A DNA stretch of 64,000 nt, taken from Magallana gigas. Taxonomy: Eukaryota. Shown one piece after another: positions 21,361 through 24,483 of the stretch. A model generated the notes under the pieces. The model was not told the origin of the DNA and did no database searches. It saw only the letters and a program-made list of their open reading frames with translations. A program made the translations under genes and the position numbers. The DNA is taken from assembly GCF_963853765.1 (NCBI RefSeq), contig NC_088856.1, positions 34,658,001 through 34,722,000 on the forward strand. The letters are read 5' to 3'. Position 1 is the first letter of the stretch. Each line of letters opens with the position of its first letter.

Positions 21361-21842
21361 AGGATGGGAACTGGAGGGGGATGGATCCAATCTTTATTGG
21401 TATTCTTGTACATCACAGCGCCGTGTCACGCCCTCGTATATGAAGAGAAGATGCCACATTTACTCCGCAATTGTTTGGAACGGACAAGTCATAAAAAGGG
21501 CAACGTGACGCGGGACACAGCCGAGTCCATCGACTACATGTGTACGAAGGAATATCTGTTCAAAACCCCCGAGGAAAGATGGCACCCAGATCTAGATAAA
21601 GTCATAAACACCAAGACTCTTAAAAAATTTGCATCTTTGTTCAAAGAACTTGACATTGGAGAAACCAGGAGTCATAAAATACGTTACAGATACTCCAGTA
21701 TCAAGAGACATTTTGTCAGGGTCAGACGAGCAACGCCAATAATCCGTAAAGAAATCCGAATGCTGTCAGAGGAAGAAAGACAGAAGTTCCTCAAAGCTCT
21801 GGTGGCAATGAAAGCGGACACTAGCGATCCCGTATAATTCAA

Positions 21843-21910
<68 letters not shown>

Positions 21911-24070
21911 AAATACTATCATGTAATCATCGTTTCTCCAATGAATACTATAAACAATTTTCAAACTCTTTCTTTTAGCAAAGACAGCCAAATGTATACG
22001 ACTGGTTCTGTAACTTGCACCCCAACAAGGTGGCTCCCAATGCGCACTATGGGCCGGCGTTCTTTGGATTCCATCGAATATACCTCTATCTGCAAGTTCT
22101 ATTACATGTACCAAGCTTTTGAACTAAAAATTGATCAATAGGTTGCGTATTCGACTTAACGATTTTGGTTCAAGAAAGTGCATACCGAAATGGTATCACT
22201 TTTAGAAATTTTAAATGACAATAAAAGTATTGTTCAAACTCTTTTTCCTATACAATTTAGAAAATAAATGTTATAAGCTGTACAATTTTCTTCTTTTAAA
22301 ATAACACGTGTAAACGGCTGTAATTATCCTTTAGATTATATATGTTACTTTTTCAGATTTGAGCAACAGCTGAGGACATACGAACCAGACACGTTTTTGC
22401 CATTTTGGGACTCCACGTACGAAAGTTTACTGGGCACTCCTACATCCAGTGTCTTGTTCACGGAAGATTTCCTGGGCGGGGGTACGGGGACCGTCACAGA
22501 CGGACCCTTCAAAAACTGGAAGCACGATAAGGTGGGTGTCCTTATTAGAAACACAGCCAACAGTGGGCAGCTCTTCCAGCGAGAGACAATAGATAAAATC
22601 ATGATGAAGATGTTTATGTCGGATATTTCAAACCCTGATGCCGAGTTTGATGTTAACCTTGAGGCAAAGCATGGTCAGGTCCATGCCTGGATAGGCGGCG
22701 CTATGGATAATTTGGACTATTCGCCGGCGGATCCGATCTTTTACATGCACCATTGCTTTGTTGATGCAATCTGGGAGCGGTTCAGAGATAACCAGGTCAA
22801 GCGTGGGATGGACCCAACATCTTATCCCGACGTCACCGAAGGACATGCAGCGAACAAACCGATGAAGCCTTTTTATCTAGAAGTGAAAAATGGTAAGAAA
22901 ATATACTTGAAGAACAAAGATGGGTATGCCTTAAAATGGTCCCAGTTAGTACGATACGTATATCCGAAAAGAGAGTGCAAGAGAAATAGCGATTGTCAAT
23001 CAGATGTGATGGTATGTCGAGAGGAACGGTGTATGACAATGACAGCTCATGAATACGAGGCTTCAAAGGCAGCGCCACCACCGCCGCCGCCGCCACCAGC
23101 ACCACCTAAGAGACGACATTCATCGTCTGTATATAAGACACCTATCAACAAAGCTCCTATCACTGCAGCTTTTTTTACCACAACTCCAGCCCCCACGCGG
23201 GGTGTAGACGACCTTCCTGGCTGGGATAACTGGTTTATGTGGAGAAAGAAGAGAAGCGTTAGTTATGTTCACACACGATATCCCTATCCCTATCATTATA
23301 TACGGCGCCATCTTTACTACCTGACCAGACGCTACAGGAAAAAGTCGAGACAGCAGAGGAGGGAAAAGATAGGAGAGGTTGGAATCAAATACAAGTACTC
23401 TGATGAGAAGACATCCCCGATCTACCATTCTCTTCAGAATACGTTTACCATCGACGGCGTGGAAGATATTGACAACTGGGTGTACATCCCAATTATAGTT
23501 TATTACAGACGACCAAACGAAGTCCATTATGATGCTCATCCTATAAGCCATGGTCATCCTATTATGAATAAGGACGTCTTCAACCAGTATCACGATGCCA
23601 ACTACATCACGCACAAAGTGGGCAATCCTGCAAAGAATGCCAACTGTTATCATATTGGTTCCGGGGCCACCAAGGTATATGTGAAGGCAACAGGGATGAA
23701 CTACAATGGGTTCTACACGGACTATGCTCTAGTCGATGAAAGGCAGCCCCTGTCCTTTGGGTTGACCGAAGTCGGGGTGAAGAAGCCGGTTGGTAAAACT
23801 CCATCAAAAGTCTATATTTCTGCCCACGATCCATGTGGCAGAAGTTGTAAAGCTCGGTGTCTGGTCGCGGGCTCCAATCCGCCTCGTTACAGAGCGTGCT
23901 CAGGGACGATTGGCGTCACCTCAAAGGGGCCTCTGATGTATAGTTCCAACATCGGCGACGCCCATCTCAACACATACGATTTCTCAACCCTTCCTCCAAC
24001 TCTGTCCAGTAAGAAAATATTCCTAGTCTTCTATTGTGACCAGAGCGAGGTGTGGCCGTGGGACGCATGA
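21361..24070 (+). CDS. secreted tyrosinase-like protein (type-3 copper), 765 aa
   Basis: Exons 21361-21831, 21979-22091, 22357-24070 (2,298 nt, in frame; intron 2 is GC-AG). Signal-peptide-like MGTGGGWIQSLLVFLYITAPCHA. CuA His: NLHPNK, NAHYG, FFGFHRIY. PFWDS motif. CuB: KHGQVHAWIGG and SPADPIFYMHH. Then Cys-rich, poly-Pro and basic Tyr-rich segments and a C-terminal Cys-containing domain. Confidence 0.93.
21849..21909. repeat. (CT)n microsatellite in tyrosinase intron 1
   Basis: ~30 CT units starting 18 nt after the donor. Confidence 0.95.
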
Positions 24071-24483
24071 TAGCAGATTATGAATCTTGAATAATAAGAT
24101 GTCACTATGTGCCATTTGATGAAATACATAAACTGCATGTGGTAAAATTTTTATTGTCTTTATTTAGAGATATACATGTATATTCTGTATTGTCTGTTTT
24201 AGAACTCTTGCCCAAATTATTGTACATGTACAAATTGAAAAATAAACTTGCGAAAAGAAACAAAATTTAATCCTCTCAAAATATTTTTAAAATACTGTTG
24301 ACGTGGATTACGTGAAGGTATGTGTGTGTGTTCCTTTCAATTTGACTATGTTTGCTATAGGACATGTACAATATTTGATATAGGGTTTGGACAGTTAGAG
24401 AACCAAACACATCTTTTAAAAAACACTACGAAAATACTAGTATTCCTTAAAAATAAATGATTTTAGTATTAAACCGTATAAGA

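What the first reader, a model, noticed from the sequence alone, without database searches (positions are those of the whole stretch)
23243..23370. Tyrosinase may encode its own substrate: a convertase-bracketed Tyr/Arg/His-rich peptide
After the catalytic domain, a Cys-rich knot and a poly-Pro linker comes a canonical furin site RKKR. Next is SVSYVHTRYPYPYHYIRRHLYYLTRRY (27 aa: 8 Tyr, 5 Arg, 3 His, no acidic residue), then further basic sites (RRYR, RKKSR, RQQRR). Tyr next to Arg/His resembles the DOPA-cation adhesive and sclerotising peptides of molluscs. A second furin site, RVRR (21,718-21,729), separates the prodomain from the catalytic domain. Hypothesis: a polyprotein cut into pro-piece, enzyme, DOPA-precursor peptide and C-terminal domain, delivering enzyme and cross-linker together.
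Basis: partly seen in the sequence, partly recalled or inferred. Interest (0 to 1): 0.7.

Follow-up and report, generated by a model that had tools for sequence, protein, structure and literature searches.

The report
Oyster pro-tyrosinase with tyrosine-rich linker
This is an expressed oyster gene for a secreted tyrosinase that looks built to be cut at two conserved furin-type sites; just after the second site sits an oyster-specific, strongly basic, tyrosine-rich stretch that could be a substrate for the enzyme itself, but that role is untested.

Summary
Observation confirmed. The window holds a three-exon, transcribed gene (21364-24070, + strand) for a 764-residue secreted tyrosinase. RKKR (23243-23254) is followed by the stated 27 residues (8 Tyr, 5 Arg, 3 His, no acidic residue). 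RVRR lies at 21718-21729. These are the only two R-x-[KR]-R motifs in the protein.

Interpretation partly supported.
- **Processing:** both sites are conserved in oyster orthologues from four genera. Both recur at the same positions across the wider mollusc tyrosinase family: 37 of 49 full-length representatives have one before the catalytic domain, and 52 of 127 have one before a conserved C-terminal domain. That domain is about 225 residues long and has no Pfam, PDB-sequence or specific fold match. In an AlphaFold model of an orthologue both sites lie in low-confidence loops between well-folded modules.
- **Tyrosine-rich stretch:** it occurs only in the oyster-family orthogroup. Its length (41-43 residues), charge and Tyr count (6-10) are kept there.
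- **"Bracketed" peptide:** weak. The downstream basic motifs differ between genera and vary within species.

The stretch therefore more likely stays as the N-terminal tail of the C-terminal fragment than leaves as a free peptide. Oxidation of its tyrosines by the enzyme is plausible but untested. An unchecked first-reader note on another part of this genome (s1-375892) describes tyrosinases as tripartite, convertase-processed proproteins.

The parts
21364..21432 (+). Start codon and likely signal peptide (residues 1-23, MGTGGGWIQSLLVFLYITAPCHA)
   Evidence: Hydrophobic core followed by a small-residue motif, read from the sequence. No signal-peptide predictor was run. Least conserved region among orthologues, 25% identity.
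21433..21717 (+). N-terminal pro-region (residues 24-118), helical, with two conserved Cys
   Evidence: 74% mean identity among four oyster genera. Helices with block-mean pLDDT mostly 72-94 (57 for residues 71-80) in the orthologue model. No Pfam match.
21718..21729 (+). RVRR, first furin-type site (residues 119-122); predicted cut before Ala123
   Evidence: R-[VA]-[RK]-R in all oyster orthologues. 37 of 49 family representatives have R-x-[KR]-R in the 30 residues before the catalytic domain, mostly 4-16 residues before it. Lies in a low-pLDDT loop of the model.
21832..21978 (+). Intron 1 (GT..AG) holding a (CT)n microsatellite at about 21838-21919
   Evidence: Transcript contigs join 21831 to 21979 (table 8). 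Sequence.
21979..22091 (+). Exon 2: CuA site (HPNKVAPNAHYGPAFFGFHR)
   Evidence: Translation. Matches the Saccostrea orthologue across both junctions.
22092..22356 (+). Intron 2, non-canonical GC..AG
   Evidence: The joint 22091>22357 with ends GC..AG is seen in contigs of three runs (table 5). It restores LYLFEQQLR, as in the orthologue.
21730..22960 (+). Tyrosinase catalytic domain (residues 123-395, across the two introns), with CuA and CuB (HGQVH...HH) histidines
   Evidence: PF00264, E 3.9e-19. The orthologue model matches Bacillus megaterium tyrosinase at Z 28.7, rmsd 2.1 A, 247 residues. 81% identity among genera.
22961..23065 (+). Four-Cys knot and following short helix (residues 396-430)
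   Evidence: The Cys columns are nearly invariant in the family alignment. 79% identity among genera.
23066..23197 (+). Variable Pro-rich linker (residues 431-474)
   Evidence: 20% identity among genera. Three-base Pro insertions in transcripts (table 4). pLDDT about 55 falling below 50 in the equivalent stretch of the orthologue model.
23198..23242 (+). Conserved Trp-rich motif RGVDDLPGWDNWFMW (residues 475-489); predicted C-terminus of the enzyme chain after cutting
   Evidence: LPGW[DN]xW[FY]xW is invariant in the orthologues. Similar W-rich runs precede the site in three distant family members.
23243..23254 (+). RKKR, second furin-type site (residues 490-493); predicted cut before Ser494
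   Evidence: R[KR][KR]R-S in every orthologue and allele read. Lies in the pLDDT<50 stretch of the model. The residue after the site is Ser in 27 of 52 family sites.
23255..23335 (+). Tyr/Arg/His-rich 27 residues (494-520)
   Evidence: Composition checked. 46% identity among genera, against 20% in the flanking linkers. Y497, H499, Y502 and Y504 are invariant. Three synonymous and no amino-acid variants in transcripts. Single copy in the genome.
23336..23383 (+). Basic tail RKKSRQQRREKIGEVG (residues 521-536) with loose dibasic motifs
   Evidence: 20% identity among genera; always basic. Basic residues vary within species.
23384..24067 (+). Conserved C-terminal beta-sandwich domain (residues 537-764) with conserved Cys; the hallmark of this tyrosinase family, not in Pfam
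   Evidence: 86% identity among genera. 206 representative clusters match it and at least 25 places in this genome. pLDDT above 90 over most of it. No Pfam, PDB-sequence or specific fold match. AlphaFold DB matches are mollusc and nematode tyrosinases.

Best explanation
The gene encodes a secreted pro-tyrosinase that furin-like proprotein convertases mature in the secretory pathway at two conserved sites. A cut after RVRR122 removes a folded N-terminal pro-region of about 95 residues. A cut after RKKR493, in a disordered linker, separates the enzyme chain (residues 123-489, ending in a Trp-rich motif) from a C-terminal fragment (494-764). That fragment has a 43-residue tail (net charge +10, 8 Tyr) joined to a conserved beta-sandwich domain of about 225 residues.

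The Tyr/Arg/His-rich stretch is an oyster-family elaboration of this linker. It most likely stays attached as the exposed N-terminal tail of the C-terminal fragment. There its tyrosines, flanked by Arg and His, could give cation-pi stickiness and be oxidised by the co-secreted tyrosinase to DOPA or quinone. That would fix the fragment, and anything bound to it, into the organic shell or periostracal matrix.

Shown: the gene model, its transcription, the motifs, and their conservation within the orthogroup and the family. Inferred: the cuts, the fate of the tail, and oxidation of its tyrosines.
For: - **Gene and transcript:**
- **Enzyme:** intact tyrosinase domain.
- **Sites:** the only two R-x-[KR]-R motifs in the protein. 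Both are conserved in Crassostrea, Saccostrea and Ostrea orthologues. Both recur at these positions family-wide, with Ser most often just after the site.
- **Structure:** both sites lie in low-pLDDT loops between confident modules. The whole-chain pTM of 0.86 indicates a compact precursor.
- **Tail under constraint:** length 41-43, Y 6-10, R 8-9, H 3-4, D+E 0-2 in four genera. Identity is 46% against 20% in the neighbouring linkers. Four Tyr and one His are invariant. Transcripts show only synonymous changes in it.
- **No conserved downstream cut:** the downstream basic motifs are not conserved and vary within species, so the tail probably stays on the domain.
- **Precedents in the literature:** shell-matrix precursors cut at dibasic sites (Pif 177 into Pif 97 and Pif 80; PMC5379566, PMC13190495). 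Tyr-rich matrix proteins proposed as tyrosinase substrates (PMC13190495).
Against: - No protein-level evidence of any cut and no DOPA data.
- The tissue and stage of expression are unknown, because the runs are coded.
- The segment is modelled with low to moderate confidence only (pLDDT 44-75), so exposure is inferred.
- 5 of 18 informative paralogues and 75 of 127 representatives lack the second site, so cutting there is not essential to the family.
- Tyr is not significantly better conserved than the other residues of the stretch: 4 of 8 Tyr against 4 of 19 others are invariant.
- The complex prediction of enzyme chain with C-terminal fragment gave no verdict.
Confidence: 0.5

Rival explanations
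1. Two cuts release a free Tyr/Arg/His-rich peptide of about 27-40 residues. The enzyme converts it to a DOPA peptide that acts as a diffusible cross-linker or adhesive primer.
For: The upstream site is canonical and conserved. Every orthologue has an RR pair about 32-35 residues into the tail, and Ostrea has RKRR there. Short basic peptides between two canonical sites occur in other family members: L009 and P0085. At 30 mol% Tyr and strongly basic, the composition resembles small mussel foot proteins (established knowledge; likeness in composition only).
Against: No conserved R-x-[KR]-R at the downstream edge in Crassostrea or Saccostrea. The downstream basic residues are polymorphic within species: RKKSR/RNKSR, RRY/NRY/SRY, RRRK/RRGK. 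The downstream edge is the least conserved part, at 20% identity.
Confidence: 0.15
2. Latency model. The C-terminal domain, the pro-region or both cover the active site, as in latent plant and fungal polyphenol oxidases and in hemocyanin units. The convertase cuts are activation steps. A conserved Tyr/His of the tail sits in the pocket as a pseudo-substrate, as Tyr98 of the Streptomyces caddie protein does.
For: pTM 0.86 for a 737-residue three-module chain implies confident packing of the pro-region and C-domain on the catalytic domain. Alignments to hemocyanin functional units run on into the C-domain, to model residues 620-658. C-terminal shielding domains removed by proteolysis are established for other polyphenol oxidases (PMC11803259). 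The conserved Y-x-H...Y-x-Y at the start of the tail recalls the caddie protein's adjacent His and Tyr (from my own knowledge; those complexes are among the matches).
Against: The C-domain has no sequence or specific fold likeness to known shielding domains. PMC11803259 does not report a C-terminal shielding domain for mollusc tyrosinases. The hemocyanin alignments add at most a few residues in the C-domain (242-247 aligned, the same as for the catalytic domain alone). The tail has low model confidence. No coordinates were available to inspect the pocket. The complex test gave no verdict.
Confidence: 0.2
3. The stretch is only a spacer and an extended polybasic convertase-recognition region. 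Its tyrosines have no role of their own, and the composition is lineage drift in a low-complexity linker.
For: Linkers of this family vary widely in length and composition (poly-Q, poly-T, Gly/Asn, Pro-rich). The Tyr-rich form exists in one orthogroup only. The stretch is predicted with low confidence.
Against: Length, charge and Tyr count are held across four genera while the adjacent linkers fall to 20% identity. The first 13 residues are nearly invariant. Changes within species are only synonymous in the 27-residue core. The joint composition arose in 0 of 5,000 shuffles.
Confidence: 0.12
4. The tail is a cationic binding module that anchors the C-terminal fragment to chitin or other polyanions or to mineral surfaces, or it acts as an antimicrobial-like peptide. 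Oxidation of its tyrosines is not needed.
For: Net charge +10 over 43 residues with no acidic residue in the core.
Against: Nothing specific supports binding or antimicrobial activity. The conserved positions are mostly Tyr and His rather than the basic residues, which vary.
Confidence: 0.08

Closest known systems
Latent polyphenol oxidases and tyrosinases of plants and fungi, activated by proteolytic removal of a C-terminal shielding domain (PF12143, PF18132; hemocyanin PF14830)
   Same: A type-3 copper catalytic domain is followed by a linker and a beta-rich C-terminal domain, with a protease-accessible linker between them.
   Different: The C-terminal domain here has no sequence or specific fold match to those domains. 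The cut sites are furin-type motifs in a secreted animal protein. There is also an N-terminal pro-region with its own site. By CuA spacing this enzyme fits the mollusc 'type a' group of PMC11803259, for which that paper reports no experimentally characterised member.
Streptomyces tyrosinase with its caddie protein (MelC1/ORF378)
   Same: It is a precedent for a tyrosinase acting on a Tyr of its own accessory polypeptide. His and Tyr lie close together in the accessory part. (From my own knowledge; the complexes are among the matches.)
   Different: The caddie protein is a separate bacterial protein with a defined fold that loads copper. Here the Tyr-rich part is a disordered stretch of the same precursor, and no contact with the pocket has been shown.
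Shell-matrix precursor Pif 177, cut at a dibasic site into Pif 97 and Pif 80 (also BMSP)
   Same: A mollusc secreted precursor is split at a basic site into two products with different roles in the shell matrix (PMC5379566, PMC13190495).
   Different: Pif has no enzyme part. Here one product is an oxidase and the other carries a possible substrate.
Tyr-rich basic structural proteins that tyrosinases are thought to cross-link (shematrins, KRMPs, periostracal proteins; mussel foot proteins 3 and 5)
   Same: High Tyr content next to basic residues, and a proposed oxidative cross-linking or DOPA chemistry (PMC13190495, PMC11667028).
   Different: Those are separate gene products, usually Gly-rich and much longer or repetitive. 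No sequence relation was shown, and no DOPA is known in this stretch.

Membership tests
Tyrosinase / type-3 copper protein (PF00264) | Match to the family profile above the curated cut-off | tested here: met
   PF00264 scores 70.3 bits (cut-off 22.6), E 3.9e-19, on the exon-3 part alone.
Tyrosinase / type-3 copper protein (PF00264) | Six copper-binding histidines (CuA H-H-H, CuB H-H-H) | tested here: met
   CuA H170, H179, H188 (HPNKVAPNAHYGPAFFGFHR). CuB H299, H303 and H326 of HH326-327. The matching columns are nearly invariant in the family alignments.
Tyrosinase / type-3 copper protein (PF00264) | Four-helix-bundle catalytic fold | tested here: met
   The orthologue model aligns to Bacillus megaterium tyrosinase at Z 28.7, rmsd 2.1 A, 247 residues. 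It was modelled on the 76%-identical Saccostrea orthologue, not on the window's own chain.
Mollusc 'type a' polyphenol oxidases (PMC11803259) | Short spacing (7-9 residues) between the first and second CuA histidines; signal peptide | tested here: met
   Eight residues lie between H170 and H179. The N-terminal hydrophobic signal-like stretch is read from the sequence only; no predictor was run.
Furin / proprotein convertase substrates | R-x-[KR]-R motif in a secretory protein, in an exposed flexible region | tested here: met
   RVRR122 and RKKR493. Both lie in low-pLDDT loops of the orthologue model. They are conserved in orthologues and family-wide.
Furin / proprotein convertase substrates | Cleavage actually occurs | not testable with these tools
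   No proteomic data were available, and transcript contigs say nothing about cleavage.
C-terminal shielding domains of polyphenol oxidases and hemocyanins (PF12143, PF18132, PF14830) | Sequence or fold likeness to those domains | tested here: not met
   No Pfam family at E up to 1. A profile of 130 sequences finds no PDB chain at E up to 10. Foldseek finds nothing at E up to 0.001. The best full-library Z is 5.5, to generic beta-sandwiches, and no hemocyanin or oxidase domain is listed.
C-terminal shielding domains of polyphenol oxidases and hemocyanins (PF12143, PF18132, PF14830) | The domain covers the active site with a placeholder residue | tested here: inconclusive
   pTM 0.86 suggests packing, and the hemocyanin alignments reach into the C-domain. 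No coordinates could be inspected, and the complex test gave no verdict.
DOPA-containing adhesive or sclerotising proteins (mussel-foot-protein-like) | High Tyr content with flanking cationic residues | tested here: met
   8 Tyr in 27 residues (30%), 5 Arg, 3 His, no acid. This composition is kept in four genera.
DOPA-containing adhesive or sclerotising proteins (mussel-foot-protein-like) | Tyr converted to DOPA in the secreted material; located in an adhesive or hardened structure | not testable with these tools
   No peptidomic or localisation data. The tissue of the RNA runs is coded.
Polyprotein that releases a free peptide between two convertase sites | A conserved canonical site on both sides of the peptide | tested here: not met
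   The upstream site is conserved. Downstream, only Ostrea has R-x-[KR]-R; the other genera have loose RR pairs or R-x-x-R, and these residues vary within species.

The most novel reading that the evidence does not exclude
An animal tyrosinase precursor carries its own substrate. After the furin cut, the enzyme hydroxylates the Tyr/Arg/His-rich tail, whether free or still on the C-terminal domain, to a DOPA-cation motif. That motif glues or cross-links the product into the oyster's periostracum, larval shell or cement, so one gene delivers catalyst and cross-linker in fixed proportion. More broadly, the two-site, convertase-matured, three-part build with an undescribed C-terminal domain may be the general regulatory design of the large and experimentally uncharacterised mollusc tyrosinase family.
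Probability: 0.22. Interest if true: 0.75.

Novelty: new variant of a known kind. Interest (0 to 1): 0.5.

Why it matters
PMC11803259 reports no experimentally characterised member of the mollusc 'type a' tyrosinase group, which numbers dozens of genes per genome. These enzymes are credited with periostracum tanning, shell-matrix cross-linking, pigmentation and DOPA formation in adhesives.

Conserved pro-region and linker cut sites give concrete construct boundaries (start at residue 123, end near 489) for making active recombinant enzyme. That is useful for producing DOPA-bearing adhesive proteins.

They also suggest that activity is controlled by convertases.

The oyster-specific Tyr-rich cationic tail is a short, synthesisable peptide with a clear test: is it oxidised by its own enzyme, and does it stick or cross-link? 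A yes would be the first case I know of in which an animal phenoloxidase gene encodes both the enzyme and a DOPA-precursor handle.

Tried and rejected
- **Complex prediction** of the catalytic chain with the C-terminal fragment (orthologue sequences): score 0.23 against a mark of 0.34, and the partner itself folded poorly (pLDDT 26). No verdict either way.
- **Raw RNA reads** of run X21: no read laid, with about 1 in 100 reads sampled. No test.
- **First homologue search** with the whole last exon was swamped by poly-Pro words and gave only 4 hits. Repeating it on residues 283-557 added a Pinctada relative.
A local phmmer search for the catalytic domain replaced it.
- **Fold and sequence searches for the C-domain** gave only generic beta-sandwich matches. 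The ESM Atlas feature search gave nothing usable.
- **A canonical GT..AG reading of intron 2** was rejected. It drops or shifts the conserved LYLFEQQL; GC..AG fits and transcripts show it.
- **The Tyr-rich stretch as an unspliced intron or alternative exon:** rejected, because contigs cover it continuously.
- **A stand-alone gene copy of the peptide elsewhere in the genome:** none found.
- **Tyrosine sulfation** was considered and set aside, because the stretch has no acidic neighbours (from my own knowledge of the motif).
- **Literature searches** found no paper on the orthologue gene identifiers, and no paper that describes convertase sites in mollusc tyrosinases. The library is open-access only, so this does not prove absence.
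Full report
**1. What is there**

The finding lies in the last exon of a + strand gene. I rebuilt the gene as follows.
- Exon 1 is 21364-21831: ATG, signal-like start, pro-region and RVRR.
- Exon 2 is 21979-22091: the CuA site.
- Exon 3 is 22357-24070: the CuB site, Cys knot, linker and C-terminal domain.

Together they encode 764 residues. Intron 2 has GC..AG ends. Only that reading restores the conserved LYLFEQQLR seen in the Saccostrea orthologue.

Contigs of three public runs from three studies are spliced exactly at 21831>21979 and 22091>22357. They cover 22415-24135 without any joint, so the gene is transcribed and the Tyr-rich stretch stays in the mRNA. Across the coding sequence these contigs carry 31 synonymous and 6 amino-acid differences. 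In the 27-residue stretch and its basic tail the count is 3 synonymous and none non-synonymous.

**2. The observation**

- RKKR is at 23243-23254 (residues 490-493).
- The next 27 residues are exactly as written, with 8 Tyr, 5 Arg, 3 His and no acidic residue.
- RVRR is at 21718-21729.
- These are the only two R-x-[KR]-R motifs in the protein.

A 27-residue window with 8 or more Tyr appears in 2.2% of shuffles of the protein. The joint composition appeared in 0 of 5,000 shuffles.

**3. The protein**

The catalytic part matches PF00264 and solved tyrosinases and mollusc hemocyanin units by sequence. All six copper histidines are present. An AlphaFold model of the full-length Saccostrea orthologue, about 76% identical over the last exon, has mean pLDDT 85 and pTM 0.86. 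Its catalytic domain aligns to Bacillus megaterium tyrosinase at Z 28.7.

Neither the N-terminal 95-residue region nor the last 232 residues match any Pfam family. In the model the pro-region is helical and the C-terminal part is a beta-sandwich. Both are mostly confident. The two basic sites fall in the low-confidence stretches: pLDDT about 49-55 around residues 101-120, and below 50 for 451-492 in orthologue numbering. The sites themselves are at 118-121 and 466-469.

**4. The C-terminal domain defines a large family**

It matches 206 representative clusters, 173 of them at E of 1e-10 or better. In all but a few fragmentary sequences it sits at or near the end of proteins of 400-1000 residues. 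Of the 153 sequences held, 124 also match the catalytic domain. The window's own genome has at least 25 places that encode it.

It has no relative among solved structures by sequence profile. It has no specific fold match either: Foldseek finds nothing at E up to 0.001, and the best Z is 5.5, to generic sandwiches. In AlphaFold DB it matches tyrosinases of scallop, mussel, oyster and octopus, and more weakly entries I recognise as nematode proteins. It is therefore not demonstrably one of the known C-terminal shielding domains.

PMC11803259 places mollusc tyrosinases in a 'type a' group. It reports no experimentally characterised member and no C-terminal shielding domain for that group.

**5. 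The two cut sites are family traits**

- **Before the catalytic domain:** R-[VA]-[RK]-R is kept in Crassostrea virginica, Saccostrea echinata and Ostrea edulis, and the Pinctada relative has KRKKR. Of 49 representatives with a complete N-terminus, 37 have R-x-[KR]-R in the 30 residues before the domain, mostly 4-16 residues before it and usually followed by Gln.
- **Before the C-terminal domain:** 13 of 18 informative paralogues in this genome have such a site 20-60 residues upstream, as do 52 of 127 representatives. The density is 0.50 per 80 residues there against 0.10 elsewhere in the same proteins. Ser follows the site in 27 of 52 cases.

It agrees with an unchecked first-reader note on another part of this genome (s1-375892). 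Cleavage itself remains inferred.

**6. The Tyr-rich stretch is specific to the oyster family**

Among the 154 family sequences held at that point, a linker with a Tyr-rich window occurs only in this orthogroup. The nearest outside relative, from Pinctada, has RKKRS but no such stretch. The stretch has no second copy in the genome.

Within Ostreidae it is constrained.
- From the cut site to the start of the domain there are always 41-43 residues, with 6-10 Tyr, 8-9 Arg, 3-4 His and 0-2 acidic residues.
- The mean identity of the 27-residue core is 46%, against 20% for the Pro-rich linker before it and 20% for the basic tail after it.
- S-V-x-Y-[VI]-H-x-[RH]-Y-x-Y is nearly invariant.
- The Trp-rich LPGW[DN]xW[FY]xW just before the site is invariant too.

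**7. The 'bracket' is weak**

Downstream of the core, only Ostrea has R-x-[KR]-R. The other genera have an RR pair at about position 32-35 or R-x-x-R.

Alleles in the protein clusters change exactly these residues: RKKSR to RNKSR, RRY to NRY or SRY, RRRK to RRGK. The first site only switches among RKKR, RRKR and RKRR, and the core never changes within a species.

A conserved second cut is therefore not supported. The tail more likely remains on the C-terminal fragment.

**8. Mechanism and rivals**

- **Best reading (0.5):** a secreted pro-tyrosinase matured at two convertase sites. The oyster-specific tail is an exposed, cationic, Tyr-rich handle on the C-terminal fragment that the enzyme may oxidise.
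- **Latency or pseudo-substrate arrangement (0.2):** hinted at by the high pTM and by hemocyanin alignments that reach into the C-domain.
- **A spacer without a role for its Tyr (0.12).**
- **A purely electrostatic binding tail (0.08).**

The complex prediction gave no verdict.

**9. Known versus new**

Three things are already known.
- Proteolytic activation of latent phenoloxidases (PMC11803259).
- Dibasic processing of shell-matrix precursors (PMC5379566, PMC13190495).
- Tyr-rich substrates of tyrosinases (PMC13190495, PMC11667028).

In the open-access library I found no description of either of the following.
- The three-part, two-site build of mollusc tyrosinases with this C-terminal domain.
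- A Tyr-rich cationic stretch placed right after the cut site.

I class the finding as a new variant of a known kind. Interest is moderate as it stands and higher if self-oxidation is shown.

Noticed in passing
window 22092-22356: Intron 2 of the tyrosinase gene uses a non-canonical GC..AG pair (donor GCAAGT). Spliced transcript contigs from three runs confirm it. Gene finders restricted to GT..AG would mis-join or truncate this gene.
   Followed up: yes
window 21838-21919: A long (CT)n microsatellite fills most of intron 1. The read tool skips it as a repeat.
   Followed up: no
window 23080-23083: Transcript contigs carry three-base insertions (CCG or CCA), each adding one Pro to the poly-Pro run. 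This is a length polymorphism in the variable linker.
   Followed up: partly
window 23198-23242: A Trp-rich motif (LPGWDNWFMW) directly before RKKR is invariant in the oyster orthologues. Similar runs (WWNWWNRRKKR, WWFWFWKKRKRR) precede the site in three distant family members (P0055, P0056, P0098). After cutting it would be the C-terminus of the enzyme chain. Its role is unknown.
   Followed up: partly
window 21433-21717: The N-terminal pro-region (about 95 residues, two conserved Cys) is predicted as a confident helical module. It is 74% identical among oyster genera and has no Pfam family. Only 4 other of the 153 family sequences match it by sequence, although most have a pro-region of similar length ending in a furin-type site.
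   Followed up: partly
L009, L011, L019 (own genome: C10:8.25 Mb, C9:27.7 Mb, C5:49.4 Mb): Other tyrosinase paralogues have linker oddities of their own. L009 has a basic peptide between RKKR and RKRKR. L011 has an acidic Tyr run (TDYYDYYYD) just before RKKR. L019 has a cluster of four or more overlapping polybasic sites.
   Followed up: no
P0005 (relative closest to the Pinctada sequence, 357 residues): This family member carries a Gly/Tyr-rich low-complexity tail after the C-terminal domain (GGYAPNF..., GGYMANF..., PPPYAAK...). It is reminiscent of Gly/Tyr-rich shell framework proteins and is another possible case of a Tyr-rich extension on a tyrosinase.
   Followed up: no
AlphaFold DB match, rank 1: The database entry that is 99% identical to this C-terminal fragment is 987 residues long, against 764 for the transcript-supported model here. 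The public gene model may be fused to a neighbour or extended.
   Followed up: no
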